Part shown: piece after piece, positions 612 to 54,224 of the stretch
Position numbering within the stretch: the stretch's first letter is position 1
Layout of the letters: each line of letters opens with the position of its first letter
From: Ranitomeya imitator
Taxonomy: Eukaryota
Assembly: GCF_032444005.1 (NCBI RefSeq)
Contig: NC_091282.1
Span: 669,228,001-669,292,000, forward strand
Direction of reading: 5' to 3'
Length of the DNA: 64,000 nt
Program-made: the position numbers and the translations under genes
The notes under the pieces: model-generated
Database searches by the model: none
What the model was told of the DNA's origin: nothing
The model's input: the letters and a program-made list of their open reading frames with translations, nothing else

Positions 612-2112
612 ATGATGGATACCACCCAAACGAGCTACACAGGACAGATTTTTATCAAGAACTTATCTTGTCATGGACGACCTCAAAAGAGAGGGACAGG
701 AAACCAAGACTTAAGAAAATCATACCAACTGCGTGGACACCTCTCACCAAATATGAATGAGAAGACATGTACTGTTGTTCTCACTCGGCTGGAAGATGTA
801 ACGGGGTCCCGCATTATTGAAAGTCAGGGCAGGAAATCCTCGAATATCTCTTGTTGGGTAGATGAATTTGGAACTCTAAAAGTTCACACTGGGCTTCCCT
901 CAGAACCTAGAAGAATGGGTTCAAAAGGACAACTTTTCCCAGGGGCATCTACTGGAGACAGTTCAATAAAGGAGTTGCCAGAACCTCGAAAGAGAAGATT
1001 AGCTTCTCTCAACGCCGAGGCAGTGAATAATTTACTTTTTGAGAGGGATGATGGTTGTTCTTCCAGGAAACTTAATAAAGATTTAAGCAAAGTTGTCGAA
1101 AACCGCAAATCAATTGTGGACTGGACTTCTTTAAAAAAGCTGGATGACCACCCGTCCAGCAAAAAAAGCAAGCAGAGATGCATAGCCCAACATAGGTCAA
1201 CTTCAGACGACGTGTTTGACGACCGCATCAAGAGAGAAGCTAGCGAAGTGTCTTATCCTCCTGCGCCAAAGAGGTTGGCGAGTTTAAATGCCGTGGCATT
1301 CCTGAAGCTTAACAATGAGAAAGGTCATGCACTGAGACAAAGGAGCAAGTCGAATGGGGACAGTGGACGTTCTTCTGTCAATACTTGCTCGAAATCCAAA
1401 CTGAAGATAACAAAATCTCACAAAAAGAACTGCATAAAACCTAAAAAAGACTACCTTCATCAGAAAACAGAGGACTACCGTGGTTGGCGTGGAGGATCGG
1501 ACATTGGATTTTTACAACCGGAACGTCAAGCGTTGACAAAATGTTTGGGTAAAGTGGAGGGTGTTCACGTGGAACAGTCTTCCAAAAAACACAATGGCTC
1601 CGGACCTTTGTACCACAGACTGCCTTTAATGGGAGGGCAGGCTTCTATGAAGCCAGAGTATGGACGACCGGGCGAAAAGTCTCCCACTCCCAAGCAAGAC
1701 TTCCAGCAGCCTTCATTTCCAGTACAACAGCTTCATCATTTGCCGGTTCCAGGAAGCCACACAGATTGCATCTGTGACTGTGACTCCTCAAATCAAGCTT
1801 CTCTAGATGGAAGCTACATTTCTTATGGCCAAAGTGGATTACAACGTAATGGATACTCACATTACTCCTTGTATCCAAAGGACGAAGCGTTTTCACAGCC
1901 AGAGCACTGTGAGGAACTCTTAGCTTCACAGAGCTCTTTACATCCTAGTGCAATGTGTGAGCATCTTCCTTGGTGCAGTTCTCGCTACGCCTACGGAGAA
2001 GACACCGGCACAAATACAGATAGTCTTTGTGGACTGATAAGGCTGCCACTTGGCAGGGTTAGCACTCACATGGGACCTAGTACCTATCCATATAAAAAGC
2101 CTTTAACACCAG
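612..2112 (+). CDS. BAHD1: BAHD1 first coding exon (large N-terminal exon)
   Basis: Motifs PRKRRLASLNAEA, PAPKRLASLNAVAFLKL and LPLMGGQASMKPE match BAHD1. Donor CCAG|GTATGT at 2113 is phase 1. The start codon could be 612 or 615. Confidence 0.92.
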
Positions 2113-4427
2113 GTATGTTCATAAAGTCTAAAAATAAAAGCTGAAAGTTATATTTCTACTGAATTAGTTGATGAGCGGAAATCTTCACCGCCCCACTTAC
2201 GGGAATGTGTGCTACTGTTTTGTTCTGTCGTCCTCCTAATGTAATGTCATATCTTAGTAATACTCTGTCGCGAGATGCCGCTATAATGTATAGTGTGGAG
2301 TCAGCCAAGTCCCTGATCTGTAAGTTATTGTTTTTGCTCTGGTCCCAGTAGATCTGTTTCCAGCATTTGCTCCGTGTTCCTCTTTTGCGCTGTCCTCCCT
2401 TGTATAAGGCTTTCCCATTGACTATAAAGGTGCGGTTCCACAAAGGTTAGGACTGAAAAAGTGTAAAAGTTTTTATAGGTCTCTTCTCTATAGGAAAGAG
2501 AATGGAATATGCGGACACTGAGAACTTGTCGCTTAGGAAAAACCCTTTCTTCGGTAATTGCCAAGATTTGGCCACCTCCTCTACAGTGCAGATAGACGCG
2601 ATCTGTAGAGCTGCCATTTTTGGAGCAGATGGCTGTCAGTCAGCAATGCTATGTTATATTTGCAGCTTCCAAGATTTCACATATTCCCCAGTTCACAAGT
2701 CTGCGTAGTGTACTAGCGTGGGAACTAGAGTCCATTATGGGCAGACTTCTCCTGCAAATTCCAGTGATCAGGCCATGGAAGAAGCCATCACAGTATACGG
2801 CCAGCTCATGTCTATCCGTCCAAGGATTTACCGCCACATTTTGTTTTTTCATACATGCGGTTTAAGAGCTGTAAACTCTTTTCTCATTCAGTTACTCATG
2901 TCATTTTTGCCGCTTTTTTGGTGACACACGGGGCTCCCTTCTATGTCATTGTTGTATTCTTTTTTTTTTGGGGTGGGCTAATATTGGTGGAAATATGCAG
3001 GAAATAAGTGTCTTTTTTCCCATTTATTTATTCTGACAACTAAAACACTGTACATTTAAAAATGTGTTCCCCATTTGGTAACAAATGTATTTAAATATGG
3101 GAGACGTTATTTGTTTTTGGGGGGTTTTACGGGGCGGCGGCTAGTTACAGCTATTTGGATTGACGGTGGCATTTTAAAAAAAAAAAATTTTACCTGTTTT
3201 TTTTTTTTTTATTTGAATTATTTTTCATTTATTTTACATATGGATATAAAAGACTTTTGGGGGGCATTTTAAATATTGAAATATTTTTTTTATTTCCCTT
3301 GTAACTGGGGCTGGAATATTATCCCCAGTTACAGGGGAAATTCCGCCTCCTGATTGCATAGCAGTGCTGTGTGCGTCACCCATGACCCAGCAGCCCCGGC
3401 TCCCTCACTATACCGTGATCACATGACCGCTGTGTATGGCGGACGAAGCGCTGTCAGCACCTTCTGTTACTGCGTACACATCATTTTAGTGCTGTGTATG
3501 TAGCAATGGAGAAGACCATACGGTTATATTCCATCTCTGCCTTCTCCATGGAGACTCTGGCTCTCGCAGCTACTTGATCACATGTAGCGGTGATGCTATA
3601 CAATGGCATTTTAGAACACCACTGCAGAGTGGGAGCCGGACCGACTGGATGCTTAAAATCTATGGGCAGCAGAAGGTGTGACAATCATAAATGAGTGTCC
3701 GTTCTTCCACATAAGTTATCTAAAGGATCACTAAACCTGGAAATGAAGCTTGAAATTTAACAAGAAATGGAGTTTAGTTTGTCAGTTTTGTGATCCAGTA
3801 GTCAGTCATGTAGAAATCCTGCTTAAAACAAGTGTATGCCCCTCTAATCATTTCCACCTTCAATGGGTAACCGGCTAAAGCTCCAGCCCCAATCCATAGG
3901 GAGAGGGTTAGTGATGTTTTGTCCTAGTGCGGACAGTGAAGAGGGGGAGGCTCCTGCTGCAGCCAGTTGTCTTTCCGGAAGAGGAGGGACGTGGCTGTTT
4001 TCTGGGGACATGCATATTTTTTTTTTCTATTTCTCAGCTTTAATTGTAAGATAGAACAACTTAGTTTTCTCCTTTTTAAGTCTAAGGGATCATTTTTTGC
4101 CATATTGTATATTTTTGGACTTACAATGTTGTTTTTTTTTCTTAGCAATAAAATTGTGGGAGCTATCTGAAGTCAGCCCTCTCCTTACCACTTCCTTTGC
4201 CAGATCACTGAGAGAACTATGTTGGAATCATAGCCACACAGTTTCCTCTAGCCCCTATGGTCTATGTCAGGGGCGCACTCCCATGTCCACTGAGCACTGA
4301 TATGTTGGTGCAGTATATGACACGATCATGTGACTGTCATTGTTTTTAGGGACACTACCATAAATCATTAAAGGTAATAGACCCCTCTGCTTCCATGGAC
4401 CACGAGGCGATATTTTAATTTGTTCTA

Positions 4428-9238: not shown

Positions 9239-10824
9239 GCCTACAAGTAGTATTCAACCCCCTGCAGATTTAGCAGGTTTAATAAGATGCAAATAAGTTA
9301 GAGCCTTCAAACTTCAAACAAGAGCAGGATATATTAACAGATGCATAAATCTTACAAACCAAAAAGTTTTGTTGCTCAGTTAAATTTTTATAAATTTTAA
9401 ACATAAAAGTGGGTCAATTATTATTCAACCCCTAGGTTTAATATTTTGTGGAATAACCTTTGGTTGCAATTACAGCTACTAATCGTCTTTTATAAGACCT
9501 GATCAGGCCGGCACAGGTCTCTGGAGTTATCTTGGCCCACTCCTCCATGCAGATCTTCTCCAAGTTATCAAGGTTCTTTGGGTGTCTCATGCGGACTTTA
9601 ATCTTGAGCTCCTTCCACAAGTTTTCAATTGGGTTAAGGTCAGGAGACTGACTAGGCCACTGCAACACCTTGATTTTTTGCCTCTTGAACCAGGCCTTGG
9701 TTTTCTTGGCTGTGTGCTTTGGGTCGTTGTCTTGTTGGAAGATGAAATGACGACCCATCTTAAGATCCTTGATGGAGGAGCGGAGGTTCTTGGCCAAAAT
9801 CTCCAGGTAGGCCGTGCTATCCATCTTCCCATGGATGCGGACCAGATGGCCAGGCCCCTTGGCTGAGAAACAGCCCCACAGCATGATCCTGCCACCACCA
9901 TGCTTGACTGTAGGGATGGTATTCTTGGGGTCGTATGCAGTGCCATCCAGTCTCCAAACGTCATGTGTGTGGTTGGCACCAAAGATCTCGATCTTGGTCT
10001 CATCAGACCAGAGAACCTTGAACCAGTCAGTCTCAGAGTCCTCCAAGTGATCATGAGCAAACTGTAGACGAGCCTTGACATGACGCTTTGAAAGTAAAGG
10101 TACTTTACGGGCTCGTCTGGAACGGAGACTATTGCGGTGGAGTACGTTACTTATGGTATTGACTGAAACCAATGTCCCCACTGCCATGAGATCTTCCCGG
10201 AGCTCCTTCCTTGTTGTCCTTGGGTTAGCCTTGACTCTTCGGACAAGCCTGGCCTCGGCACGGGAGGAAACTTTCAAAGGCTGTCCAGGCCGTGGAAGGC
10301 TAACAGTAGTTTCATAAGCCTTCCACTTCCGGATGATGCTCCCAACAGTGGAGACAGGTAGGCCCAACTCCTTGGAAAGGGTTTTGTACCCCTTGCCAGC
10401 CTTGTGACCCTCCACGATCTTGTCTCTGATGGCCTTGGAATGCTCCTTTGTCTTTCCCATGTTGACCATGTATGAGTGCTGTTCACAAGTTTGGGGAGGG
10501 TCTTAAATAGTCAGAAAAGGCTGGAAAAAGAGATAATTAATCCAAACATGTGAAGCTCATTGTTCTTTGTGCCTGAACTACTTCTTAATACTTTAGGGGA
10601 ACCAAACAGAATTCTGGTGGGTTGAGGGGTTGAATAATAAATGACCCCCTGAAAAGACTTTTCACAATTTAAAAAAAAAATAAACAAAGAAATAACATTC
10701 TTTTTTGCTGCAGTGCATGTCACACTTCCAGGCTGATCTACAGTCCAAATGTCAGAATGCCAAGTTAATTCCAAATGTGTAAACCTGCTAAATCTGCAGG
10801 GGGTTGAACACTACTTGTAGGCAC

Positions 10825-10826: not shown

Positions 10827-10910
<84 letters not shown>

Positions 10911-10913
<3 letters not shown>

Positions 10914-12513
10914 TGGGGCAAAAAAGTATTTAGTCAGTCAGCAATAGTGCAAGTTCCACCACTTAAAAAGATGAGAGGCGTCTGTAATTTACATCATGGG
11001 TAGACCTCAACTATGGGAGACAAACTGAGAAAAAAAATCCAGAAAATCACATTGTCTGTTTTTTTAACATTTTATTTGCATATTATGGTGGAAAATAAGT
11101 ATTTGGTCAGAACCAAAATTTCATCTCAATACTTTGTAATATATCCTTTGTTGGCAATGACAGAGGTCAAACGTTTTCTGTAAGTCTTCACAAGGTTGCC
11201 ACACACTGTTGTTGGTATGTTGGCCCATTCCTCCATGCAGATCTCCTCTAGAGCAGTGATGTTTTTGGCTTTTCGCTTGGCAACACGGACTTTCAACTCC
11301 CTCCAAAGGTTTTCTATAGGGTTGAGATCTGGAGACTGGCTAGGCCATTCCAGGACCTTGAAATGCTTCTTACGAAGCCACTCCTTCGTTGCCCTGGCGG
11401 TGTGCTTTGGATCATTGTCATGTTGAAAGACCCAGCCACGTTTCATCTTCAATGCCCTTGCTGATGGAAGGAGGTTTGCACTCAAAATCTCACGATACAT
11501 GGCCCCATTCATTCTTTCATGTACCCGGATCAGTTGTCCTGGCCCCTTTGCAGAGAAACAGCCCCAAAGCATGATGTTTCCACCACCATGCTTTACAGTA
11601 GGTATGGTGTTTGATGGATGCAACTTAGTATTCTTTTTCCTCCAAACACGACAAGTTGTGTTTCTACCAAACAGTTCCAGTTTGGTTTCATCAGACCATA
11701 GGACATTCTTCCAAAACTCCTCTGGATCATCCAAATGCTCTCTAGCAAACTTCAGACGGACCCGGACATGTACTGGCTTAAGCAGTGGGACACGTCTGGC
11801 ACTGCTGGATCTGAGTCCATGGTGGCGTAGTGTGTTACTTATGGTAGGCCTTGTTACATTGGTCCCAGCTCTCTGCAGTTCATTCACTAGGTCCCCCCGC
11901 GTGGTTCTGGGATTTTTGCTCACCGTTCTTGTGATCATTCTGACCCCACGGGGTGGGATTTTGCGTGGAGCCCCAGATCGAGGGAGATTATCAGTGGTCT
12001 TGTATGTCTTCCATTTTCCAATTATTGCTCCCACTGTTGATTTCTTCACTCCAAGCTGGTTGGCTATTGCAGATTCAGTCTTCCCAGCCTGGTGCAGGGC
12101 TACAGTTTTGTTTCTGGTGTCCTTTGACAGCTCTTTGGTCTTCACCATAGTGGAGTTTGGAGTCAGACTGTTTGAGGGTGTGCACAGGTGTCTTTTTATA
12201 CTGATAAGTTTAAAAAGGTGCCATTACTACAGGTAATGAGTGGAGGAAAGAGGAGACTCTTAAATAAGAAGTTACAGGTCTGTGAGAGCCAGAAATCTTG
12301 ATTGTTTGTTTCTGACCAAATACTTATTTTCCACCATAATATGCAAATAAAATGTTAAAAAAAACAGACAATGTGATTTTCTGGATTTTTTTTTCTCAGT
12401 TTGTCTCCCATAGTTGAGGTCTACCTATGATGTAAATTACAGACGCCTCTCATCTTTTTAAGTGGTGGAACTTGCACTATTGCTGACTGACTAAATACTT
12501 TTTTGCCCCACTG
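10911..12513 (-). mobile_element. Full-length Tc1 transposon with ~200-bp TIRs (ZB-like)
   Basis: TA|CAGTGGGGCAAAAAAGTATTTAGTCAG ... CTGACTAAATACTTTTTTGCCCCACTG|TA. TIRs at 10911-11112 and 12310-12513 are nearly identical. Length 1603 bp. Confidence 0.95.
11126..12148 (-). CDS. Intact Tc1 DD34E transposase, 340 aa
   Basis: [14 protein letters not shown]... [23 protein letters not shown] with 34-residue spacing. No stops or frameshifts. Confidence 0.95.
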
Positions 12514-12619
12514 TATATATATATATATATATAGAAAAAAATTAAAAATTAGAACAGCATCATATCACCAAACTTGTGGTGGAAAGCTCTCCAAACCAAT
12601 ATTCCAATGGTTCCAATAA

Positions 12620-19607: not shown

Positions 19608-20428
19608 TTAAAAGAACAGGGGCAGCAGCATTTTTTTCCCCTCCACAGCAGCACTGCCATCTATCTGCAGTGTAGGGAAGTGCAACACAGCCCGATGTAT
19701 GTGAAAGAAGCAGCTCCCTGTACAGCAGTGCCACTTTGACAGTAAAAATGATGGAGAATTGACCCCATAACTGAGCGTATTTACTCCATTGTATAATAAT
19801 TGGGAATATCCCTTTAAAATAAAAAAGTAATATTTGCAGATTATTTAATAATACGGAAAATCTGATGGTTCAGAACCTAACCTGTCACTTTTAGGTTGCA
19901 TTCATTTATATCTTCAGTTTTAAAGCTGAAGTCTTAAACAGGTAAAGTTTTACTTTTATTCTTCTTCCACATATGTAGCAAATATTTTGTGTACCTGCCT
20001 GAAATCGGCTGGGGAAGGAGTTCGGCAAGATGGAAAGCCCCCAAGGCAAATGTTAGGATTTTTTTCAGCTTTGTGGTATTGTGCTTTAGGGTAGTGTGGT
20101 GCCACCTGCAGGTCATTTTTCCTTACTGCAGTTTTATGAAAATTAATATTTAAAATGTATTTTGTGATAACATCGTGGATGTGTGGTTTGTTTTGCTATT
20201 TTCTTACTGACAAGTTTACCTTTGAAATGGTGTATCGTGTGTGTGTGTGTGTGGGTGCAGAATGAACGGAGATACAAAGGAATCACAGTAATAGTGTTTT
20301 GAAATAATGTAGAAGGATTTATTTTACAAGTGGATGTAAAGGACATGCTGAGCTAAAACTAGTCTGGCCAGTTTTCACACTTCTAACATGTTAAGATAAA
20401 GCCTAAACTATCTAGAAAAAAGTGCGTG

Positions 20429-22014
20429 TGTAACAACTCTGCTGGCATCACGGCATGGCCTCACATCTCTCACACAATCTTACCCACTGCTCCAGGTCAT
20501 GATGTGGTTTCTGTTTCATGCCAGCTCCATGTTCTGTGTCTCTGCTCTCTGCATGCCTCATGGCTATGTGTATAGGGGGCCGGCGCCTGAACTCTCTGGT
20601 TCTTATAGGAATCGGGTGCATCTGTCCAATCAGTTCATGACCAATTATCAAGAGGCTTCCTGTATATAGTGCAGCTCCACCCTGTGCTCTGGGCCTGTGC
20701 AATGTGTTTGCTCAGTTAGTGTTTTGCTTCTGAGTTTGCCTGGCCTTGCTCTGTGTTGCTCCCTCTCTGGAGGCTTTTCTCTGTGCATTTGCCTTTATCT
20801 TTGTCCGCCCTCCAGGAGGCAGAATATCCTGGTCCCTGTGTCTTTGTCCTTGTGTCTTGTTCCATTGCCTTGTCTGTACTTGGTCTTGTCTCGGTCTCCT
20901 TGTGTGTGCCTTCCTTCCCTGCTGTGTCTTTCCTTGTGTTCTCGGTCTGCTTGCACTCCGCACTCTTGCGGCTCTGCCTGCTCTGCATCTTGGTGGCTTA
21001 GCCGCTGCTCCGCACTTCTGCGGTTCTGCTCCGTCTTGCTCTGCTCCGCTCCCGTTGCTGCAGAAACCTCTTGCTGCAATTCCTCTCTGCAATCCTTGCG
21101 GTTCCACTCTGCTTAGCTTCTGCAGTATCTCTTGCTGCAGCTTCTCTCCACATTCTTTGTGGCTCTGCTCAGCTTTTGTCGCTACGCTACCGCTTGCTGC
21201 TTTTCCATTCCTATCTGCAGTCTTTCATTCCTCTCCTGTGTGAACAGGTCCCTACCTGTTCCTCAACTATATATCCCTACCTGTTCCTTCATCTCACTCA
21301 CAATTGGACTGCACTCGGGTGTCATCTGAGTGCAGCCTGATTCTAATATTTCATCAGCTAGTCCTGTGTTTCCTGCCGTCCTAGCCAGTCCTGTCTCCTG
21401 CCGTCCTAAGTCAGTTCTGTCTCCTGCCGTCCTAGCAAGCCCTGTGTTCTCTGCCGTGTCTCTGCCAGCCCTGTGTTCCAAACTACAAATCTGTACCTGC
21501 ACGTCCAGTGTGAACAGGCCCTTACCTGTTCCTTCATATACCACATCAACCAGTCCTGTGTTCTCTGCCGTGCCTCCCAATCCTGTGTTCCTGCCAGTCC
21601 TGCCGTTCCTGCCCTGCCTTCCAGTCCTGTGTTCCTGCTGTCCTAGCCAGTCCTGTTTCCTGCCGTGTCTCTGCCAGCCCTGTGTTCTCTGCCGTGTCTC
21701 TGCCAGCCCTGTCTCAGCTGTGCCAGCCTACTCGTCTGTGTTCCAGCCGTGCTCTTCTGCCAGTCCTGCCTAATGCCCGCACCAATCCTGGTCTTCCTGT
21801 CTCCCAAGTGGGATCAGCAGCCACAGCCAGACACCACCCTGGAGTAGCACCTGGCAGCTGCCTGCTGCACAAGCCTGTCCTCACCATCAGAGGCTCCAGT
21901 GAAAACCCAGGCAGCTGTCATAGTCACGCCCCTTCCAGGGTAGTCTGGCTTGTGGCACAGTGGGGCCACAAAACCCCCGAGCTCACGCCCACCAGTCAGG
22001 GCGCGAGCGTAACA
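20429..22014 (+). repeat. 5' LTR (1586 bp)
   Basis: Direct repeat of 23993-25580. CCAAT boxes at 20626 and 20641, TATATA at 20663, and an internal CCAGTCCTGTGTTCCTGCC tandem array. Confidence 0.92.
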
Positions 22015-22028
22015 GTTTTGCACAGGCC

Positions 22029-23981
22029 ATGGCCTCCGCTGTATCCCATGTCCTACCGCTCGCAGAGCATGATGAACTTTCTTTCTACCAGTGTGAGCAA
22101 GCTGAAGAATTTGTTCCGCGCTGTGTCGTTCCAATTGAGGAGACCTCGGGCCCAATCATAATTTCTAATGCCCTCTACGATCAACTTCGGGCCTATGAGG
22201 AGGAGCACGACCCAGCTGACCCACCTAGGTTCTATGGGAATCCAGAGGAATGCCAAAGCTTCCTGGAACAGTGCTTGCGCTACATTCTGCAGAATGCAGC
22301 TTGTTTTCCCTCTGACCAGATTAAGGTGGCCTACATCATGTCCTACCTAGCAGGAGATGCGTTATTATGGATTTGTCCCCTCTGGGAAGCAGGGGATCCT
22401 ATCGTCATGAGTCTTGGGGCCTTCCTGGTGGCCTTCCGTAAAGTCTTTGACAAGCTTCGTCCTGCTGCTCCTGTGAAGTCTTCCCCATCTAGATCCGAGA
22501 GGCGCTCCAGACGGGCGAAACCCGTGAAGAAACCTCCACGTCAAGCCATGACTGTCTGTGATCCTCCAGTTCCTCTACCCGTTAAAGCAGCTACTCTAAT
22601 AGAACCCAAAAAGACTGTCAAGAGTGGACTGGCAAAGCATCAGTCTAAGACCAGTCGTAAGAAGGGCCTACTATGTCGCTGCTGTTGTGAGGAACACCTG
22701 GAAGACCTCTGTCCAGGGGATCTAAAGCTCCAAAACCTCGGGCCAGTAGGAGAGACTGCCCTTGGTGAGAATAACTCCCTTCCGCTAAAGTCTGAGTCTG
22801 TTCCAGTGCCTTGTGGGAGCTTCGGTCCTGCAGATGTGTTAAAGCTGCTAACCAGACGGAGTCTAAGTGTGATTCCTGTTCCACTGCTCCAGAATCCTGT
22901 GAAGGTGTTTGGTGATTGCCGAGTCCTACTTATGAACAGTCCAGTGTTGAAGGGACAACTACAGCTCCAAATCGGAGCATTGTATGCGGAGAGATTTGTT
23001 TTCCACTGGTTGACCAGTCCGCCCGTCGGTCGTTCTGAACCGGATACTCTGCTGCCCGTTCCGGTCCAAAGACCCAGCGTGGTTCTGCGTTTGGAACTAT
23101 CAAGTCTCCAGAAGTTTCTTGTTCCTAAACTGCTAGGTCAATCTACAGTGTTGATATCTTCTCCACCTAATCAGCTGGCTATTGAGTCACAGTGTGCTGA
23201 CCTCACTGAAGTAAAGAAAGCAGTGGCGTCCTCTCCGTACACCTCCAGTGACCAGTTCCCAGGAACATCCCTGTCACTTAAAAAATTTTCCCTGAACTTT
23301 GGGAAGAAGATGCTTCCTGTAATGATGCCTTCAGATTCCATGTGGCAGGTGGATGAAGAAGTTGAAGCTGAAGCTCTTCCATCTCTGTTCTTCACCAGTC
23401 CGGAGGAAGAGATGGTCCAGTTTTGTCTGAGTAACAAGCTGATGGGGCTTCCTGAATGTATGTCTTCTGCTTCCAAGTGGCTACTTGATACTAAGACAGA
23501 GACTTACTCATCCTCTAATCTAGAAGAGGAGGTCCAGTTTTTTCAGGGTACCAGGCTGAAGATGTTTCCTGTATGTATGCCTCCAGTTTCCATCTGGCTA
23601 TTTGGTGAAGATCCCAAGACAGAAGTATTCTCATCTCTGCTTTCCACCGGTCTAAAGGAGAAGGTCCAATTTTCTTGTAATGATGGGCTTAAGTTGGATC
23701 CAGTGAACGTGTCTTCAGTTCCCAAGGAATCACATTATGTTGTGGTCAAATCGCAAGCTTCCAAGTCCCTGCTTTCAATTAACCAGGTGAAAGAAGTCCT
23801 GGCCCTTGTGTCTTCTGTGTGGGAAGCTGATCGTACTGGACTCAAAGAGACTGAGCATCCTGAGATCTCTAATGTCTCAAATACCTCATTCTACGAGAGG
23901 AATGTTGTGATGGCTATGACTGTGTGCTCCTATCCTTCTTCTACAGGTTGTTCTGGCGGGCTTGAAGAGGAGGGGCCGTAA
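22029..23981 (+). CDS. Gag-like protein with long C-terminal extension containing degenerate ~40-aa repeats (650 aa)
   Basis: GCCATGG start 14 nt after the LTR. Capsid-like block PPRFYGNPEECQSFLEQC...VAYIMSYLAGDALLW...FLVAFRKVFD (PEG10/RTL1/sushi-type) and variant zinc knuckle CRCCCEEHLEDLCP. No PR, RT, RH or IN motifs. Confidence 0.8.
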   Translation: MASAVSHVLPLAEHDELSFYQCEQAEEFVPRCVVPIEETSGPIIISNALYDQLRAYEEEHDPADPPRFYGNPEECQSFLEQCLRYILQNAACFPSDQIKVAYIMSYLAGDALLWICPLWEAGDPIVMSLGAFLVAFRKVFDKLRPAAPVKSSPSRSERRSRRAKPVKKPPRQAMTVCDPPVPLPVKAATLIEPKKTVKSGLAKHQSKTSRKKGLLCRCCCEEHLEDLCPGDLKLQNLGPVGETALGENNSLPLKSESVPVPCGSFGPADVLKLLTRRSLSVIPVPLLQNPVKVFGDCRVLLMNSPVLKGQLQLQIGALYAERFVFHWLTSPPVGRSEPDTLLPVPVQRPSVVLRLELSSLQKFLVPKLLGQSTVLISSPPNQLAIESQCADLTEVKKAVASSPYTSSDQFPGTSLSLKKFSLNFGKKMLPVMMPSDSMWQVDEEVEAEALPSLFFTSPEEEMVQFCLSNKLMGLPECMSSASKWLLDTKTETYSSSNLEEEVQFFQGTRLKMFPVCMPPVSIWLFGEDPKTEVFSSLLSTGLKEKVQFSCNDGLKLDPVNVSSVPKESHYVVVKSQASKSLLSINQVKEVLALVSSVWEADRTGLKETEHPEISNVSNTSFYERNVVMAMTVCSYPSSTGCSGGLEEEGP

Positions 23982-23992
23982 AGGGGGGGTAC

Positions 23993-25580
23993 TGTAACAT
24001 CTCTGCTGGCATCACGGCATGGCCTCACATCTCTCACACAATCTTACCCACTGCTCCAGGCCATGATGTGGTTTCTGTTTCATGCCAGCTCCATAGTCTG
24101 TTCCTCTGCTCTGTGCATGCCTCATGGCTATGTGTATAGGGGGCCGGCGCCTGAACTCTCTGGTTCTTATAGGAATCAGGTGCATCTGTCCAATCAGTTC
24201 CTGACCAATTACCGAGCGGCCTCCTGTATATAGTGCAGCTCCACCCTGTGGTCTGGGCCTGTGCAATGTGTTTGCTCAGTTAGTGTTTTGCTTCTGAGTT
24301 TGCCAGGTCTAGCTCTGTGTTGCTCCCTCTCTGGAGGCTTTTCTCTGTGCATTTGCCTTTATCTTTGTCCGCCCTCCAGGAGGCAGAATATCCTGGTCCC
24401 TGTGTCTTTGTCCTTGTGTCTTGTTCCATTGCCTTGTCTGTACTTGGTCTTGTCTCGGTCTCCTTGTGTGTGGCTTCCTTCCCTGCTGTGTCTTTCCTTG
24501 TGTTCTCGGTCTGCTTGCACTCCGCACTCTTGCGGCTCTGCCTGCTCTGCATCTTGGTGGCTTAGCCGCTGCTCCGCACTTCTGCGGTTCTGCTCCGTCT
24601 TGCTCTGCTCCGCTCCCGTTGCTGCAGAAACCTCTTGCTGCAATTCCTCTCTGCAATCCTTGCGGTTCCACTCTGCTTAGCTTCTGCAGTATCTCTTGCT
24701 GCAGCTTCTCTCCACATTCTTTGTGGCTCTGCTCAGCTTTTGTCGCTACGCTACCGCTTGCTGCTTTTCCATTCCTATCTGCAGTCTTTCACTCCTCTCC
24801 TGTGTGAACAGGTCCCTACCTGTTCCTCCAAACTATATATCCCTACCTGTTCCTTCATCTCACTCACAATTGGACTGCACTCGGGTGTCATCTGAGTGCA
24901 GCCTGATTCTAATATTTCATCAGCTAGTCCTGTGTTTCCTGCCGTCCTAGCCAGTCCTGTCTCCTGCCGTCCTAAGTCAGTTCTGTCTCCTGCCGTCCTA
25001 GCAAGCCCTGTGTTCTCTGCCGTGTCTCTGCCAGCCCTGTGTTCCAAACTACAAATCTGTACCTGCACGTCCAGTGTGAACAGGCCCTTACCTGTTCCTT
25101 CATATACCACATCAACCAGTCCTGTGTTCTCTGCCGTGCCTCCCAATCCTGTGTTCCTGCCAGTCCTGCCGTTCCTGCCCTGCCTTCCAGTCCTGTGTTC
25201 CTGCTGTCCTAGCCAGTCCTGTTTCCTGCCGTGTCTCTGCCAGCCCTGTGTTCTCTGCCGTGTCTCTGCCAGCCCTGTCTCAGCTGTGCCAGCCTACTCG
25301 TCTGTGTTCCAGCCGTGCTCTTCTGCCAGTTCTGCCGAATGCCCGCACCAATCCTGGTCTTCCTGTCTCCCAAGTGGGATCAGCAGCCACAGCCAGACAC
25401 CACCCTGGAGTAGCACCTGGCAGCTGCCTGCTGCACAAGCCTGTCCTCACCATCAGAGGCTCCAGTGAAAACCCAGGCAGCTGTCATAGTCACGCCCCTT
25501 CCAGGGTAGTCTGGCTTGTGGCACAGTGGGGCCACAAAACCCCCGAGCTCACGCCCACCAGTCAGGGCGCGAGCGTAACA
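23993..25580 (+). repeat. 3' LTR (1588 bp)
   Basis: Direct repeat of the 5' LTR, followed by TSD GCGTG. Confidence 0.92.
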
Positions 25581-26506
25581 GCGTGTGTGTATATATACAC
25601 ACAGTAGGGGAAATAAGTACTGTTTTTAAGTATTTGATTATATATAAAATACATTTTTTTAATTTTATTTTTTAATACATTACAAAATGTTCAATTTTGC
25701 TATGTAATCTGACAGCAGCATGATGTAGGGGCAGAGACACAGATGACAACGATGTATCACTTACTAGGCTTTGTTTTGCAGTTTCAATACAATGTGTTTT
25801 ATCAGCAGGAGATTATCACTAATTACTAGATGTCTTGTAACTCCTGTTCCAACCACATCCTGACCACTGATTAGTCGTTACACAGCAGTACATCTGTAGC
25901 AAAGAAAACTGTGATTGTATCACCACTTCTGCACCCAATAAATAAAGGGATACATTGCTGGAATCTGGGTCTCTGCCCCTACATCCTGGTACTCTCAGAT
26001 GTGGTAGCTAAAACTAGGGAACAAATTCCCTTTAAGAAAACAATGGGAAGCCACTTTTCCAAATAACACTTATCTTCAAAACTGCTGGTAACCTGATTTT
26101 TCTTTTAAAGTTCCTCTCTCAAGTTGAAAGCCTGCAGTATGCAGTATTGTGGACTATCGCCAAACATCACTCAGTGCCGCAGCCTCCTTTACTGTCTATC
26201 TTTTTTTTATTTACCTGCCATACGTGCTTGTGACCACTGCAGCCAATCACAAGAACACCAAAGTCGGTGATTGGCTACAACAGTCATGTGGATGTAAGTG
26301 ATATCATTGCTGCAGGATAAGTAAACCGGGGACTGTAGAAAACCCCTTTAATGCTGGGACTATCTGCATTCGGGGTTGTACCAAAAAGCCTGATTGGGAA
26401 TCTGGTCTGCACTGTGAGTTAACCCTTTTAATATGATGACTTTTCTTTTTGGAATTACTCTAATTTCCCTTCTGTCCCAATATACATTCATAGGAGACCT
26501 CTTTAA

Positions 26507-47800: not shown

Positions 47801-49379
47801 ACACTTTGACCCCTTCACAAACAAAGAATTCGCACGCAGGACCTGGAACACCATTCTAACCTGCTTCACGTGAGACTCCCAATCATCCGAGAAGACCAAA
47901 ATATCATCCAAGTAAGCAATCAGGAATTTATCCAGGTACTCTCGGAGGATGTCATGCATAAAGGACTGAAATACTGATGGAGCATTGGAAAGCCCGAATG
48001 GCATAACCAGGTACTCAAAATGGCCCTCGGGCGTATTAAATGCTGTTTTCCATTCATCGCCCTGTTTAATACGCACAAGACTATACGCACCACGAAGATC
48101 TATCTTGGTGAACCAACTAGCCCCCTTAATCCGAGCAAACAAATCAGACAGCAGCGGCAAGGGGTACTGAAATTTGACCGTGATTTTATTTAGAAGGCGG
48201 TAATCAATACAAGGTCTCAACGAACCATCCTTCTTGGCCACAAAAAAGAACCCTGCCCCCAATGGCGACGATGACGGGCGAATATGACCCTTCTCCAAGG
48301 ATTCCTTTACGTAACTCCGCATAGCGGCGTGCTCAGGTACAGACAAATTCAACAGTCGACCTTTAGGAAACTTACTACCAGGAATCAAATCGATAGCACA
48401 ATCGCAATCCCTATGCGGAGGTAGGGCACTGGACTTGGGTTCATCAAATACATCCCGGTAATCTGACAAGAACTCTGGGACCTCAGAAGGGGTGGATGAT
48501 GAAATAGACAGAAATGGGACATCACCATGTACCCCCTGACAACCCCAGCTGGACACAGACATTGATTTCCAATCCAATACTGGGTTATGGACTTGTAGCC
48601 ATGGCAACCCCAACACGACCACATCATGCAGATTCTGCAACACCAAAAAGCGAATATCCTCCTGATGGGCAGGAGCCATGCCCATGGTCAGTTGGGTCCA
48701 ATACTGAGGCTTATTCTCGGCCAAAGGCGTAGCATCAATTCCTCTCAATGGAATAGGATGCTGCAAGGGCTCCAAGAAAAACCCACAGCGCCTAGCATAC
48801 TCCAAGTCCATCAAATTCACCTGAGGAAGGAAACTCAGAAGCCGCAGCCCCACTCACATCCACCAGAGGAAGCTCATAGACAGAACCAGCCGATGTACCA
48901 CTCATGACCACAGGAGGGAGCTTGACCACAGAATTCACAACACTTTGCGGTCAGCACAAAAACCTACAAACAACCACGCAGAGGGCGCAAAAAGACCCTC
49001 CGCACCGACTAACGGTACGGAGGTGCTTCCTCTGCGTCCCAGAGCTTCCAGCAAGCAAGACAAACCAATATAGCAAGCTGGACAGAAAAAATAGCAAACA
49101 AAAGTAACACAAGCAGAACTAAGCTTATGCAGGGCAGACAGGCCACAAGAGCGATCCAGGAGAGAGCAAGACCAATACTGGAAAATTGACTGGAGGCCAG
49201 GAACAAAGAACTAGGTGGCATTAAATAGAGCAGCACCTAACGACTTAACCTCGTCACCTGAGGAAGGAAACTCCGAAGCCGCAGCCCCACTCACATCCAC
49301 CAAAGGAAGCTCAAGGACAGAACCAGCCGAAGTACCACTCATGACCACAGGAGGGAGCTTGACCACAGAATTCACAACA
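44829..49379 (-). mobile_element. Ty3/Gypsy chromovirus (sushi-like) LTR retrotransposon with gag deleted
   Basis: Full 3' LTR at 44829-45649, PPT adjacent, 5' LTR fragments at 48819-48942 and 48943-49379, 6-bp TSD GGGGAA. Confidence 0.92.
45642..48818 (-). pseudogene. pol (protease-RT-RNase H-integrase-chromodomain), frameshifted near 47780
   Basis: RT: LRPCIDYR, YLDD. RNase H: VDASEIGAGAVL, TDHKNL. Integrase: GHPG...C..C, SMDF, SDRGSQF, GQTERTNQ, GPY. Chromodomain: YIVEKILDSR...YLVKWKGY. The two ORFs are in different frames. Confidence 0.92.
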
Positions 49380-49561
49380 GGGGAACCACCGTTTGGGCGC
49401 ATGGCAGAGCTTGGAATGGAAGTGGGGACGTTTTGGAATGCAGACTTAGATGGAATGATCTGCAGGCGTCATGTTGCGTTTTCAGAACCACTCATGTGCC
49501 TAAACAGTAGAAACTCCCCACAAGTGACCACATTTTGGAAACTAGACGCCCAAGGAACTTA

Positions 49562-49910: not shown

Positions 49911-50639
49911 TTATCTAGATGTGTTGTGAGAACTTTAAACCCCCAAGTGTTTCACTAAAGTTGATAACGCAGAGCCGTGAAAATAAAAAATCATTTTTTC
50001 CCACAAAAATGATTTTTTTAGCCTACAAATTTTTATTTTCATAAGGCAACAGGAGAAATTGGACCACAAAATTTGTTGTGGGGGTAAACTACTATTTGGG
50101 CGCACGGCAGAGCTCAGAGGGGAAGGACCACCATTTGACTCTTTCAATGGAAAATTGAGATTAGATGCCATGTCGCGTTTGGAGAGCCCCTGATGTGCCT
50201 AAACATTGGAAACCTCCCAATTCTAACTCCAACCCTAACTCCAACACACCCCTAATCCCAATCCAAACCATAACCCTGACACACCCCTCATCCTAATCCC
50301 AACCCCAATTTTAGCCCTAACCCTAATGGGAAAATGGAAATAAATTGTAGCAACCCTGCTGGCATCACTGCATGGCCTCCTATCCCCCACCTGCATTACA
50401 CTCAAACTCACTTCTCTGGGCCTTGTGGTGACTTCTCTCTGCTGCCAGCTCCATGCTGTGTGCCTCATGTCTGCTGTCTGCTCTGTGCATGCTCTGTCTG
50501 TGTGCATAGGGGGCGGCGCCGGCAACTCCTGTTTTTTATAGAGACTGTGTGCACCTTGCTAAGTTGTCCCTGGCCAATCGCCATGAGGCTTCCTGTATTT
50601 AAGACATCCCCACCCTTTGGTGGGGGCCTGTGCAACTAA

Positions 50640-51350
50640 AGGCCCTGTCACACATAGCGAGATCGCTAGCGAGATCGCTGCTGAGTCACAAGTTTTGTGA
50701 CGCAACAGCGATCTCAGTAGCGATCTCGCTATGTGTGACACGTACCAGCGATCAGGCCCCTGCTGTGAGATCGCTGGTCGTGTCGGAATGGCCTGGGCCA
50801 TTTTTTGATCGTTGAGGTCCCGCTGACATCGCTGAATCGGCGTGTGTGATGCCGATTCAGCGATGTCTTCGCTGGTAACCAGGGTAAACATCGGGTTACT
50901 AAGCGCAGGGCCGCGCTTAGTAACCCGATGTTTACCCTGGTTACCATCGTTAAAGTTAAAAAAACAAACGCTACATACTTACCTACCGCTGTCTGTCCCC
51001 GGCGCTCTGCTTCTCTGGTCTGGCTGTGAGCGGCGGGCAGCCGGAAAGCAGAGCACAGCGGTGACGTCACCGCTCTGCTTTCCGGCCGCTGTGCTCACAG
51101 CCAGAGCAGAGAAGCCCAGCGCCGGGGACAGACAGCGGTAGGTAAGTATGTAGCGTTTGTTTTTTTTAACTTTAACGATGGTAACCAGGGTAAACATCGG
51201 GTTACTAAGCGCGGCCCTGCGCTTAGTAACCCGATGTTTACCCTGGTTACCCGGGGACTTCGGCATCGTTGAAGACAGTTTCAACGATGCCGAAGTCTTT
51301 CCCCGGATCGTTGGTCGCTGGAGAGAGCTGTCTGTGTGACCTGTGGGCCT
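50640..51350. mobile_element. Harbinger-type MITE with nested internal palindromes
   Basis: AGGCCCTGTCACACA ... TGTGTGAC(ctgt)GGGCCT. Two copies of the hairpin GGTAACCAGGGTAAACATCGGGTTACTAAGCGC...GCGCTTAGTAACCCGATGTTTACCCTGGTTACC. Confidence 0.72.
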
Positions 51351-52439
51351 TTACTCCCTCAGTCAGTTCTTAGCTGCTGAGGTGCCAGGCCCTGTCTCGG
51401 TTACTCTCTCTTGTCTGCCACCCAGGGGGGCGTTGTACCCTGGTCTGTGTCCTGTGTAGCCACCCAGTGGGGCTTAGTACCCTGGCCTATGTTTTTGTGT
51501 AGCCACCCAGCGGGGCTTCGTACCCTGGCCTATGTCTGCCACCCAGAGGGGCATCGTACCCTGGCTTGTGTCTGTCTCTGTGTCTTGTCTCGTTCCTGAC
51601 TCTGTCTTAGTCTAGTCCTATTCCTCTGTCTGTTTATATCTCTGTCTTGGTTTGCCTGTTCTGCTGTGCATTCTCTGTGTCTTGCTTTGCTCCGCTTTCG
51701 GCTCCGCTCTCTGCGACCTTGCTTTGCTCCTTGCTCTGCAGTGACCTTGCTCGGCACTCTGTGTCTTGCTCTGCACTCAGCTCTGCACTCTGTGGCTTAG
51801 CTCTAGCTCTGCTCTCAGTAACTTTGCTCTGCACTCTGACCTTGCTATGCACTGTGGCTTCGCTCTGCACTCTGACCTTGCTCTCCACTCTGTGGCTTCG
51901 CTCTGCGGCTCCACTCCTTGCGGTTCTACCTGGCTCTGCTCTTTGCGGTTCTACTGCTCCAGCTCTTGGCTCCGCCTCCTGCGTTTCTGTGCTTGGCTCC
52001 GCCTCCTGCTCTTGGCTCTGCCTTCTGCGTTTCTGTTCCTATCTCTAGCTCCTGTGCTTTCGCTGTGCATCGGCTCTTGCGGTCTTCCCCTACCTTTTCT
52101 TAAGTCCTCCTGTCTGAACAGGTTCTTACCTGTTTTGCAGACCTGCCTGCAGTCTGGTCCCTACCGGTTCTTCCAGTGTACCAGCCTTGTCCACCTGTCT
52201 TGCCTGTGTCCCAGCCGTGCCCGCCTGTATGCTGGAGTGCCAGCCATGCCCGCTTGCCTGTCTATGTTCCGTTCCCCGGTGGGATCAGCAGCCACAGCCA
52301 GACATCACCCTGGAGTGGTACCTGGTAGCTTCCTATTGCACACGTCTGACCTCACCATCAGAGGCTCCAGCGAACACCTAGGAAGCTACTTAGTTACGCC
52401 CCTTCCAGGGAAGTTTGGTCTGTGGTCCAGTGGGGCCAC

Positions 52440-53185
52440 TGTTGTGAGTTCTGTTTTTGGGCTCCCTCTGGTGGTTACTGATGGTACTGGGTGACTTGTG
52501 TTCTCTGCGGTCTCTGGTGTCCACCTGTTCCATCAGGTTATGGGAGTTTCCTATTTAACCTGGCTTTTTTGTCATTTCCTCGCCGGCTAGCAATGTAATC
52601 AGCGTGTCTTTTTACCTCTGCTACCTGCGTCTGTTATCTTCAGGACAAGCTAAGTTTTGATTTTCCTGTTCTACGTTTTGCTTAATTTTTGTCTTAGTCC
52701 AGCTTGCAGATATGTGATTCCTTGCTGCTGGTTGCTCTAGTGGGCTGAAATTACTCCTCATGTTCCATGAGTTGGCACATGAGTTCAAGTAATTTCAGGA
52801 TGGTTTTTTGAAGGGTTTTTCGCTGACCGCGCAGTTCACTTTTGTATCCTCTGCTATCTAGCTTTAGCGGGCCTCATTTTTGCTGATTCTATTTTCATAA
52901 CTACGTATGTGCTTTCCTCTCATTTCACCGTTATTACATGTGGGGGGCTGCTATTTCTGTGGGGTGTTTCTCTGGAGGCAAGTGAGGTCTGTGTTTCTTC
53001 TAATAGGGGAAGTTAATCCTTCGGCTGGCACGAGACGTCTAGGAATCATCGTAGGCACGTTCCCCGGCTACTGCTAGTTGTGTGTTTAGGTTCAGGATCG
53101 CGGTCAGCTCAGGTTCCATCACCCTAGAGCTTGTTTTGTTTTTGTGCTTGTCCTTTTGTGATCCCCTGCCATTGGGATCATGACA
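52440..53185 (+). mobile_element. Solo LTR (TGTTGTGA... family)
   Basis: TG...CA termini, 6-bp TSD GGCCAC, and a start resembling the LTR of the 44829-49379 element. Confidence 0.8.
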
Positions 53186-54224
53186 GGCCACACCCCCGCA
53201 CGCCCGCGCCAACCAGTCTGGGCGCGTGCGTGACATAAATACATTTTTTTTTATTTTATTATTTTTCCATAAGAGGGTGATAAAGGGGGGTTTGGCGTAC
53301 TATTTATAGCAGGTTTTTATAGCGGATTTTTATGATTGGCAGCCGGCACACACTAAAAGACGCTCTTTATTGCAAATAATATTTTTTGCATCACCTCATT
53401 TTGAGAGCTATAATTTTTCAATATTTTGGTCCACAGAGTCATGTGAGGTCTTGTTTTTTGCGGGACGAGTTGATGTTTTTATTGGTAACATTTTCGGGCA
53501 CGTGACATTTTTTGATCGCTTTTTAATCCGATTTTTGTGAGGTAGAATGAACAAAAACCTGCAATTCATTAATTTCTTTTGGGGGAGGCGTTTATACCGT
53601 TCCGCATTTGGTAAAATTGATAAAGCAGTTTTATTCTTCTGGTCAGTACGATTGCAGCGATACCTCATTTATATATTTTTTATAATGTTTTGCCGTTTTT
53701 ATACAATAAAAACTATTTTATATAAAAAATAATTAGTTTTGCATCAATTTATTCTGAGAGCTATAACTTTTTTATTTTTCCGGTGATGGAGCTATATGGT
53801 GGCTTGTTTTTTGCAGGACAAGATGACGTTTTCAGCGGTACCACGTTTATTTATATCCTTCTTTTTGATCGCGTGTTATTCAACTTTTTGTTTGGCGGTA
53901 TGATGATAAAACATTTTTTTTTGCCTTTTTTTTTAATGGTGTTCACTAAAGGTGTTAACTATTGGGACAGTTTTATAGGTCGGGTCGTTACAGACACAGC
54001 AATACTAAATATGTGTACTTTTATTGTTTAGATTTTTTTTTTTAGTTCAAAAATTTATTTATTGACTGAATAGTACGTCCAATGCCAGAAAGGGGTTAAT
54101 GTCACTTTGATACAATCCTCCTTATTTTGCTTCAGATCTAGCAGAGCTTAAAGTGAACTTGTCGCCCCCAAAATCGAAGGTGAGCTAAGCCCACCAGCAT
54201 CAGGGGCTTATCTACAGCATTCTG

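What the first reader, a model, noticed from the sequence alone, without database searches (positions are those of the whole stretch)
20429..25580. Gag-only LTR retrotransposon with an intact 650-aa ORF and a repeat domain where pol should be
Seen: matched LTRs, TSD and PPT. A single ORF fills the interior, from 14 nt after the 5' LTR to a stop overlapping the PPT. After the capsid-like block and variant zinc knuckle there are ~400 aa without protease, RT, RNase H or integrase motifs. These include degenerate tandem units (EEEMVQF..LMGLPECM..SKW / EEEVQF..LKMFPVCM..SIW / KEKVQF..LKLDPV) spaced 39 and 44 aa apart (VQF codons at 23415, 23532, 23664). Established: gag-only non-autonomous LTR elements (TR-GAG) are described in plants, and sushi-type gag gave rise to PEG10/RTL genes. 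Inference: a mobile element that makes its own capsid with a novel appendage and borrows Pol. An open frame across non-homologous sequence suggests selection on the extension.
Basis: partly seen in the sequence, partly recalled or inferred. Interest (0 to 1): 0.82.

Follow-up and report, generated by a model that had tools for sequence, protein, structure and literature searches.

The report
Frog gag-remnant non-autonomous LTR retrotransposon
This is a young, complete copy of a poison-frog jumping gene that has lost its copying enzymes but keeps one long, conserved gene made of half a capsid protein, a dead protease remnant and a frog-specific repeat tail, so it must borrow enzymes from a relative to move.

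Summary
Two 1.59-kb LTRs (98.6% identical), a 5-bp target duplication (GCGTG), a polypurine tract and one 650-aa ORF filling the interior are all present at the stated coordinates.

New here:
- The element has a Tf1/sushi-type self-priming site. Eleven nt just after the 5' LTR are the exact complement of 11 nt lying 29 nt downstream of the LTR's TATA box.
- The 1.34-kb leader has only 2 ATGs, against about 12 expected.

The "gag" is only the N-terminal lobe of capsid (Pfam DUF4939). The C-terminal lobe, which multimerises, is replaced by a +17-charged linker, and the zinc knuckle is degenerate.

The "extension" is not wholly novel. Residues 282-331 are a weak but significant relic of the retropepsin domain, without DSG. 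The next block may derive from the PR-RT junction. The rest, including four tandem 40-44-aa units, matches nothing outside dendrobatid frogs.

Colinear open copies exist in Ranitomeya imitator and Dendrobates tinctorius at 37-93% amino-acid identity, which argues for purifying selection. No DNA of other copies could be fetched, so dN/dS is untested.

Verdict: a non-autonomous, TR-GAG-like member of the vertebrate Tf1/sushi lineage. It is a new variant of a known kind. Self-made capsids are unlikely.

The parts
20424..20428 (+). 5' target-site duplication GCGTG
   Evidence: Identical pentamer at 25581-25585.
20429..22014 (+). 5' LTR (1586 bp, TG...CA)
   Evidence: 98.55% identical to 23993-25580.
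20429..20691 (+). U3 (inferred). Carries CCAAT boxes at 20626-20630 and 20641-20645 and TATATA at 20663-20668.
   Evidence: The boxes are conserved in a 70%-identical related solo LTR. 14 of the 23 LTR-LTR differences lie here.
20692..20702 (+). Inferred transcript start and self-primer GGCCTGTGCAA (start of R)
   Evidence: Exact reverse complement of 22018-22028. Lies 29 nt after the TATA box. Also present at 24256 and, unchanged, in the related solo LTR at 50625.
20692..22028 (+). 1337-nt leader (R-U5 plus PBS), pyrimidine-rich and ATG-poor
   Evidence: 2 ATGs against 11.6 +/- 3.2 in shuffles. Tandem 25-53-nt repeats. No AATAAA or ATTAAA.
22018..22028 (+). Primer-binding site of the self-priming (Tf1/sushi) type, TTGCACAGGCC
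   Evidence: 11/11 complementarity to 20692-20702. 8 of 2000 LTR shuffles contain any such 11-mer. There is no TGG directly after the LTR.
22029..23981 (+). Single ORF, 650 aa plus stop. Start context GCCATGG.
22221..22448 (+). Capsid N-terminal-lobe-like block (aa 65-140)
   Evidence: Pfam DUF4939, E = 5.7e-9. Aligns to full sushi-type gags with invariant F78, C82, S105, L107, G109, W114, F132.
22455..22673 (+). Basic Pro/Lys/Arg/Ser-rich linker (aa 143-215, net charge +17). Sits where the capsid C-terminal lobe should be.
22674..22712 (+). Degenerate zinc knuckle (aa 216-228)
   Evidence: In the alignment to CX2CX4HX4C knuckles, the second Cys, His and last Cys are kept, and the first Cys position is Leu with a Cys next to it.
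22872..23021 (+). Retropepsin relic (aa 282-331), no D[ST]G
   Evidence: hhalign against a 52-sequence PR alignment: score 22.2, P = 0.004. Column shuffles give mean 11.6, sd 2.5, max 20.2 (n = 150). Spacing from the knuckle matches autonomous elements.
23193..23303 (+). Block resembling the PR-RT junction (aa 389-425). Duplicated 2-3 times in the diverged subfamily.
   Evidence: hhalign P = 0.06, z about 2.3. Colinear but suggestive only.
23268..23783 (+). Four degenerate tandem units of 40-45 aa (aa 414-585)
   Evidence: The same unit type occurs in P0004 and P0005.
23784..23978 (+). C-terminal tail (aa 586-650)
   Evidence: Aligns to the tail of P0004 and P0005.
23980..23992 (+). Polypurine tract AAAGGGGGGG plus TAC
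   Evidence: The same GGGGGGGTAC-TGT junction occurs in the pol-bearing element at 45650 (minus strand).
23993..25580 (+). 3' LTR (1588 bp)
25581..25585 (+). 3' target-site duplication GCGTG
50347..53236 (+). Solo LTR of a related subfamily, with TSD TAAAT. Interrupted by a palindromic insert and a nested solo LTR.

Best explanation
This is a recently inserted, structurally intact copy of a non-autonomous LTR retrotransposon family of dendrobatid poison frogs. The family descends from the Tf1/sushi branch of Ty3/gypsy elements.

Inferred cycle:
1. RNA polymerase II starts about 29 nt after the TATA box in a 263-nt U3.
2. The transcript carries a 1.34-kb ATG-poor leader, the 650-aa ORF and the polypurine tract.
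3. The first 11 nt of the RNA fold back onto the complementary site just after the 5' LTR.
4. A partner element's RNase H cuts there and makes the primer, as in Tf1.
5. Reverse transcription and 5-bp-duplicating integration use RT, RNase H and integrase supplied in trans by an autonomous sushi-group chromovirus.

Shown: the ORF is a much-remodelled gag-PR. It has the capsid N-lobe, a strongly basic linker in place of the C-lobe, a degenerate knuckle, a dead protease relic and a lineage-specific repeat-bearing tail.

Inferred: the ORF is under element-level purifying selection.

Most likely role (speculative): the protein binds the element's own RNA through the basic region and enters the partner's particles through the capsid N-lobe. 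It does not build a shell alone. The function of the tail is unknown.
For: Structure:
- LTR pair, TSD and PPT.
- 11-nt primer/PBS complementarity placed correctly relative to the TATA box, with the primer conserved in a 70%-identical subfamily LTR.
- Leader ATG depletion and a good start context.

ORF content:
- DUF4939 hit.
- Alignment to full sushi-type gags shows the missing C-lobe, which is the part matching PEG10 7lga and Ty3.
- No RT, RNase H or integrase by Pfam, BLAST, tblastx or hhalign.
- PR relic.

Family:
- An exhaustive phmmer search of 1.84 billion representative proteins with the extension found only dendrobatid proteins.
- Colinear open homologues at 93%, 66-73% and 37-43% identity.
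- Neutral-substitution simulations leave such stretches stop-free in only about 1% of runs.
- An abundant chromovirus pol family sharing the PPT junction lies in the same window.
Against: - No DNA of any other copy could be obtained, so dN/dS and copy number are unknown.
- All homologues are pieces of chimeric gene models. Gene predictors choose open frames, which biases the stop-free argument.
- The primer and PBS are 1.3 kb apart, far more than in Tf1.
- No canonical poly(A) signal was found in the LTR.
- The transcript start was not measured.
- The partner is not identified. The ORF's gag is only about 25% identical to the gag of the neighbouring pol family, and the two interiors share nothing beyond the 12-nt PPT.
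- The PR relic is statistically modest, and the PR-RT junction match is not significant.
Confidence: 0.75

Rival explanations
1. It is a passively decaying deletion derivative. The ORF is open only because this copy and its master are young, and the extension has no function.
For: The R-U5 parts of the LTRs differ by only about 0.5%. The P0001-level divergence (93%) would stay stop-free by chance in about 31% of simulations. AlphaFold gives no confident fold for the extension (pLDDT 28).
Against: The extension is colinear and open at 37-43% identity in a diverged R. imitator subfamily, and at 66-73% in D. tinctorius. Only about 1% of simulations stay stop-free at that divergence. The leader is ATG-depleted and the start context is good.
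Confidence: 0.12
2. The ORF product antagonises or freeloads on the partner. A capsid N-lobe-only protein joins the partner's Gag lattice and limits or redirects particle assembly. RTL8 is reported to do this to PEG10 (from memory, not checked here).
For: Only the N-lobe is retained and the multimerising C-lobe is gone. The basic linker could still bind RNA.
Against: There is no functional data. A self-harming inhibitor would not obviously help the element spread. Gag similarity to the only partner candidate seen is low.
Confidence: 0.15
3. The part of the extension after residue 425 is captured host coding sequence.
For: It has no similarity to any pol domain. LTR elements do transduce host fragments.
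Against: The exhaustive protein search found no host-gene homologue in any organism. The only real hits are other copies inside chimeric frog gene models. The two non-frog hits are repeat or low-complexity matches.
Confidence: 0.07
4. It is a domesticated host gene of the PEG10/RTL/LDOC1 type rather than a mobile element.
For: It has a DUF4939 gag block and a long conserved ORF.
Against: It has near-identical LTRs, an intact TSD, a PBS and a PPT. Several dispersed copies and a related solo LTR exist.
Confidence: 0.03

Closest known systems
TR-GAG elements of plants (terminal-repeat retrotransposons with a GAG domain; discussed in PMC13570524)
   Same: An LTR pair, PBS, PPT and one ORF that retains gag (sometimes gag/PR) but no RT, RNase H or integrase. 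Regarded as semi-autonomous and mobilised in trans.
   Different: Vertebrate host. Tf1/sushi ancestry with self-priming. The gag is cut down to the capsid N-lobe. The ORF is long (650 aa), with a conserved repeat-bearing tail that makes up two thirds of it. The LTRs are very long (1.6 kb) with a 1.3-kb leader.
Tf1/sushi group of Ty3/gypsy chromoviruses (Tf1 of fission yeast, sushi-ichi of pufferfish)
   Same: Self-priming PBS complementary to the first 11 nt of the transcript, a trait stated for this group in PMC6317226. DUF4939-type gag. Purine tract next to the 3' LTR. 5-bp TSD.
   Different: No RT, RNase H, integrase or chromodomain. The protease is reduced to an inactive relic. The capsid C-lobe is missing.
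PEG10 / RTL / LDOC1 domesticated sushi-type gag genes of mammals
   Same: The same gag lineage. Fish relatives carrying DUF4939 include one named PEG10 by its source. Some family members are truncated gags.
   Different: Those are single-copy host genes without LTRs. This one is a multi-copy element with fresh LTRs and a TSD.
Parasitic or partner-dependent LTR elements such as LARDs, TRIMs and BARE2 (from memory)
   Same: Depend on an autonomous relative for enzymes.
   Different: LARDs and TRIMs are non-coding, and BARE2 has a defective gag. This element keeps a long conserved ORF.

Membership tests
LTR retrotransposon (structural definition) | Direct long terminal repeats with TG...CA ends, flanked by a short target-site duplication | tested here: met
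   98.55% identical LTRs. GCGTG on both sides.
LTR retrotransposon (structural definition) | Primer-binding site after the 5' LTR and polypurine tract before the 3' LTR | tested here: met
   Self-complementary PBS at 22018-22028. AAAGGGGGGG at 23980-23989. No tRNA-type TGG PBS adjoins the LTR.
Tf1/sushi group | Self-priming: the PBS is complementary to the 5' end of the element's own transcript | tested here: met
   11/11 nt complementarity with a site 29 nt after the TATA box, conserved in a diverged subfamily LTR. The transcript start itself was not measured.
Tf1/sushi group | Placement by RT/integrase phylogeny, and an integrase chromodomain | not testable with these tools
   The element has no RT or integrase.
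Tf1/sushi group | Sushi-type gag | tested here: met
   DUF4939, E = 5.7e-9, above the curated cut-off. The same domain occurs in fish gag-pol relatives.
TR-GAG-like non-autonomous element | A single ORF with a gag domain and no RT, RNase H or integrase | tested here: met
   Only a weak inactive PR relic lies beyond gag.
TR-GAG-like non-autonomous element | Mobilised by an identifiable autonomous partner | tested here: inconclusive
   A chromovirus pol family with the same PPT junction and similar U5 end is in the window and is abundant in R. imitator gene models. Gag identity is only about 25%, and no other sequence is shared.
Assembly-competent retroelement Gag | Both capsid lobes (N-terminal and C-terminal) | tested here: not met
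   About 95 aa are absent. In full sushi-type gags this stretch matches the PEG10 CA C-terminal half (7lga) and the second half of Ty3 CA. No Retrotrans_gag or Ty3_capsid hit.
Assembly-competent retroelement Gag | Canonical CX2CX4HX4C zinc knuckle | tested here: not met
   The first Cys position is Leu. Extra Cys residues are nearby. The D. tinctorius copy reads CX2CX2HX4C.
Retropepsin (A2 aspartic protease) | Catalytic D[ST]G motif and recognisable fold | tested here: not met
   No D[ST]G in the ORF. No Pfam protease hit at E <= 10. Only a partial profile match to the middle of the domain.

The most novel reading that the evidence does not exclude
The conserved 415-aa region after the knuckle may be a pol N-terminus rebuilt into a new functional module, for example an adaptor. 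Such a module would let an element carrying only the capsid N-lobe load its RNA into the particles of sushi-type chromoviruses, or regulate those particles. That would be a previously undescribed semi-autonomous strategy for a vertebrate LTR retrotransposon.
Probability: 0.25. Interest if true: 0.65.

Novelty: new variant of a known kind. Interest (0 to 1): 0.45.

Why it matters
- Gag-retaining non-autonomous LTR elements are documented mainly in plants. Here a vertebrate example comes with a clear lineage (Tf1/sushi), an apparently intact cis-acting toolkit and a conserved ORF.
- That ORF has shed most of what is recognisable as Gag-Pol: only the capsid N-lobe survives intact, with a degenerate zinc knuckle and a weak inactive protease relic. 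If selection on it is confirmed, it becomes a tractable case for asking what minimal protein a parasitic retroelement needs in order to exploit a partner.
- It is also a free-living parallel to the truncated sushi-type gag genes that mammals domesticated (RTL8, LDOC1).
- For annotation, pieces of this ORF are already fused into Ranitomeya and Dendrobates gene models, where they appear joined to CSAD, a sulfotransferase and ATG8. Those models should be flagged.

Tried and rejected
- **DNA of other copies.** Look-ups for P0001-P0005 returned no DNA because the sample files were too large. The exact ORF is not on record. dN/dS could therefore not be computed.
- **Structure.** AlphaFold2 gave pLDDT 28 for the extension and 43 for the gag part. 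That is too low for a fold search, so none was run.
- **Sequence searches that found nothing.** PDB sequence search with the ORF. Pfam on the extension and its relatives at E <= 10. Rfam on the element. tRNA scan of the window.
- **Recent deletion derivative of the neighbouring pol element.** Rejected. BLASTP, blastn and tblastx show nothing beyond the 12-nt PPT.
- **Pairwise test of the PR relic.** Smith-Waterman against the neighbour's PR was not significant for the window copy (p = 0.14) and borderline for the D. tinctorius copy (p = 0.014). Only the profile-profile test was significant.
- **P0005 as evidence that the extension follows pol in an autonomous element.** Rejected. It is a 14.7-kb multi-exon model that also contains ATG8.
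- **tRNA-type PBS.** I recognised no match from memory to the TGG-starting sequence at 22030. The self-priming reading fits better.
Full report
**1. Observation**

The region holds a textbook LTR-retrotransposon frame.
- The 5' LTR (20429-22014) and 3' LTR (23993-25580) align at 98.55% over about 1588 bp. Both start with TG and end with CA.
- GCGTG lies directly outside both ends.
- The interior is 1978 bp. One ORF occupies almost all of it: ATG at 22029, 14 nt after the LTR, and stop TAA at 23979-23981, running into the purine run AAAGGGGGGG-TAC that abuts the 3' LTR. This gives 650 aa.
- The adjacent frame has 34 stops, so the open frame is not a composition effect.
- I find a fourth, upstream unit (aa 414-458). 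The six unit pairs score z = 2.8-15 against shuffles.

**2. Host and family**

- The window carries Tc1/Sleeping-Beauty-type transposases and a Ty3/gypsy chromovirus pol.
- Protein searches with the ORF hit only dendrobatid frog proteins:
  - two Ranitomeya imitator gene models carrying ORF fragments at 75-93% identity (P0001, P0002);
  - a Dendrobates tinctorius model at 66-73% (P0003);
  - two R. imitator models from a diverged subfamily at 37-43% (P0004, P0005).
- All are chimeric models in which pieces of this ORF are spliced to host genes, including CSAD, a sulfotransferase and ATG8.
- The neighbouring pol family matches dozens of R. imitator models at 92-96%. The window is therefore from Ranitomeya or a very close relative.
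- A solo LTR of a related subfamily lies at 50347-53236, with its own TSD TAAAT. Together these show a multi-copy, multi-subfamily mobile family.

**3. Cis-acting signals (new here)**

- No tRNA-type PBS adjoins the 5' LTR. Instead, TTGCACAGGCC at 22018-22028, 3 nt after the LTR, is the exact reverse complement of GGCCTGTGCAA at 20692-20702.
- That 11-mer lies 29 nt downstream of TATATA (20663), which is where a transcript should start.
- Any such 11-mer complement appears in only 8 of 2000 LTR shuffles, before its position is taken into account.
- In the solo LTR, whose U3 is only about 70% identical, the CCAAT boxes, the TATA-like box and a 12-nt block containing this 11-mer are conserved while the flanks diverge.
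- This is the self-priming arrangement of the Tf1/sushi group. PMC6317226 states that self-primers are described for Tf1/sushi elements of yeast and vertebrates.
- It implies a 263-nt U3 and a 1.32-kb R-U5.
- The resulting 1337-nt leader has 2 ATGs against 11.6 +/- 3.2 expected. One of the two lies within the first 13 nt. The ORF's ATG sits in GCCATGG. This fits translation of the ORF from the full-length RNA.
- No AATAAA or ATTAAA exists in the LTR, so the poly(A) site is unexplained.
- LTR-LTR differences are very uneven: 14 in the 263-nt U3 against 9 in the other 1323 nt (Fisher p = 1.7e-6). Many are adjacent or transversional changes. The likeliest cause is post-insertion gene conversion of one U3 by another copy, or homogenisation of R-U5. 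The age estimate is therefore ambiguous, at about 0.5% or about 5% divergence.

**4. The gag part**

- Pfam finds only DUF4939, at aa 65-140 (E = 5.7e-9).
- Full sushi-type gags from fish and from the neighbouring frog family carry DUF4939, Retrotrans_gag and Ty3_capsid over about 160 aa, followed by a CCHC knuckle and PR.
- Aligned with eight such gags, the ORF matches from the PPRFYG... block to FRKVFD, with seven invariant positions. It then lacks about 95 aa and realigns at the EP motif and the knuckle.
- A profile of that alignment hits Ty3 Gag across both halves. It hits PEG10 chain 7lga precisely over the stretch that the ORF lacks. PMC10309623 describes 7lga as the C-terminal half of capsid, which mediates multimerisation.
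- In its place the ORF has a 73-aa linker with net charge +17.
- The knuckle keeps the second Cys, His and last Cys at canonical spacing but has Leu at the first Cys position. The D. tinctorius copy reads CX2CX2HX4C.
- The protein therefore has a capsid N-lobe and a nucleic-acid-binding-like region, but not the parts needed to build a shell alone.

**5. The extension**

- It shows no similarity to RT, RNase H or integrase by Pfam at E <= 10, by BLASTP, blastn or tblastx against the neighbouring pol, or by hhalign against RT and RH-IN alignments.
- An exhaustive phmmer search of 1.84 billion representative proteins with aa 236-650 gave five hits. Three are the frog copies and two are repeat or low-complexity matches. 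A captured conserved host exon is therefore unlikely.
- The front part is not foreign. A 4-sequence alignment of aa 236-385 against a 52-sequence retropepsin alignment built from hits gives an hhalign match of ORF 282-331 to PR positions 48-97. The score is 22.2 (P = 0.004), and none of 150 column shuffles reaches it (mean 11.6, sd 2.5, max 20.2).
- Its distance from the knuckle matches autonomous elements. The DSG and LGxPWL motifs are gone.
- The next block (aa 389-425), duplicated 2-3 times in the diverged subfamily, resembles the conserved DVF..A..LPPHR..D.AIDL junction before RT. This is colinear but not significant (P = 0.06, z about 2.3).
- From aa 426 onward nothing is recognisable.
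- AlphaFold2 with the shallow alignment gave pLDDT 28, so no fold search was run.

**6. Selection**

- dN/dS could not be computed, because no DNA of other copies was retrievable.
- Indirect evidence comes from the homologues. The extension, its two repeat types and its tail are colinear between this ORF and the 37-43%-identical subfamily. The D. tinctorius copy is open over 265 aa at 66%.
- I simulated neutral substitutions on the window's own codons down to those identities. The stretch stayed stop-free in 1.35% and 1.1% of runs, ignoring indels. For the 93% copy the figure was 31%.
- Caveat: gene predictors prefer open frames, so this argument is biased.
- Taken with the ATG-poor leader, I judge element-level purifying selection on the whole ORF likely (about 0.7).

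**7. Mechanism and partner**

- Shown: the frame, the signals, the domain content and the conservation.
- Inferred: transcription from about 20692, Tf1-type self-priming, and trans-supply of RT, RNase H and integrase.
- The only candidate partner visible is the chromovirus on the minus strand (pol ORFs 45642-48853). It shares the GGGGGGGTAC-TGT junction and a similar U5 end, and it is abundant.
- However, its gag is only about 25% identical to this ORF's N-lobe, and that copy is itself rearranged. The partner therefore remains open.
- The role of the protein is speculative. I favour RNA binding plus entry into partner particles through the N-lobe. An inhibitory role is the main functional rival.

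**8. Comparison and verdict**

- Functionally it resembles plant TR-GAG elements (PMC13570524). By descent it belongs with the vertebrate Tf1/sushi lineage, the same stock as PEG10 and the RTL genes.
- It fails the tests for an assembly-competent Gag and for an active protease.
- It is a real feature and a new variant of a known kind, of moderate interest.
The "own capsid with a novel appendage" reading needs changing to [quoted passage not shown].

Noticed in passing
window 44833-49380 (minus strand): Rearranged Ty3/gypsy chromovirus. The pol is split by a frameshift: PR-RT in 47618-48853, and RNase H, integrase, SH3 and chromodomain in 45642-47804. The 3' LTR starts at 45650. Upstream, a truncated LTR (49380-48943) abuts a second LTR start that runs straight into PR. 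Gag and the catalytic start of PR are missing.
   Followed up: partly
window 50347-53236: Solo LTR of a subfamily related to the studied element, with TSD TAAAT. It is interrupted by a palindromic MITE-like insert (about 50640-51330, arms 50874-51251). It also holds a nested solo LTR of the TGTTGTGA family (52441-53186, flanked by GGCCAC).
   Followed up: partly
window 20429-20691 compared with 23993-24255: The U3 parts of the two LTRs differ by 5.3% while R-U5 differs by about 0.5-0.7% (p = 1.7e-6). This suggests gene conversion with another copy after insertion, so LTR dating of this element is unreliable.
   Followed up: partly
window 21243-21262 and 21508-21527 (and the same sites in the 3' LTR): Two copies of a short hairpin motif, GAACAGG(T/C)-loop-ACCTGTTC, each preceded by GTGT, inside the long leader. 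Many 25-53-nt CCTGCCGT-type tandem repeats lie nearby. Function unknown.
   Followed up: no
window 9438-10469 (-) and 11126-12148 (-): Two intact Tc1/Sleeping-Beauty-type transposase ORFs (343 and 340 aa; HTH_SB, HTH_Tnp_Tc3_2, DDE_3). The second sits between 98%-identical inverted repeats (10891-11117 / 12305-12533), so it may be a recently active copy.
   Followed up: no
window 61800-64000: Satellite array of 93-bp units, at least 21 copies at about 92-94% identity, running to the end of the window.
   Followed up: no
window 612-2144 (+): A 510-aa open frame rich in Ser and Lys with an internal duplicated RLASLNA motif. No Pfam hit above threshold (weak EFF-AFF, E = 0.002) and no PDB sequence match. 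It may be a large host exon or another element's ORF.
   Followed up: partly
proteins P0001, P0002, P0004, P0005 (R. imitator) and P0003 (D. tinctorius): Public gene models fuse fragments of this retrotransposon ORF to host genes, including CSAD, a sulfotransferase and ATG8. These look like annotation chimeras.
   Followed up: partly
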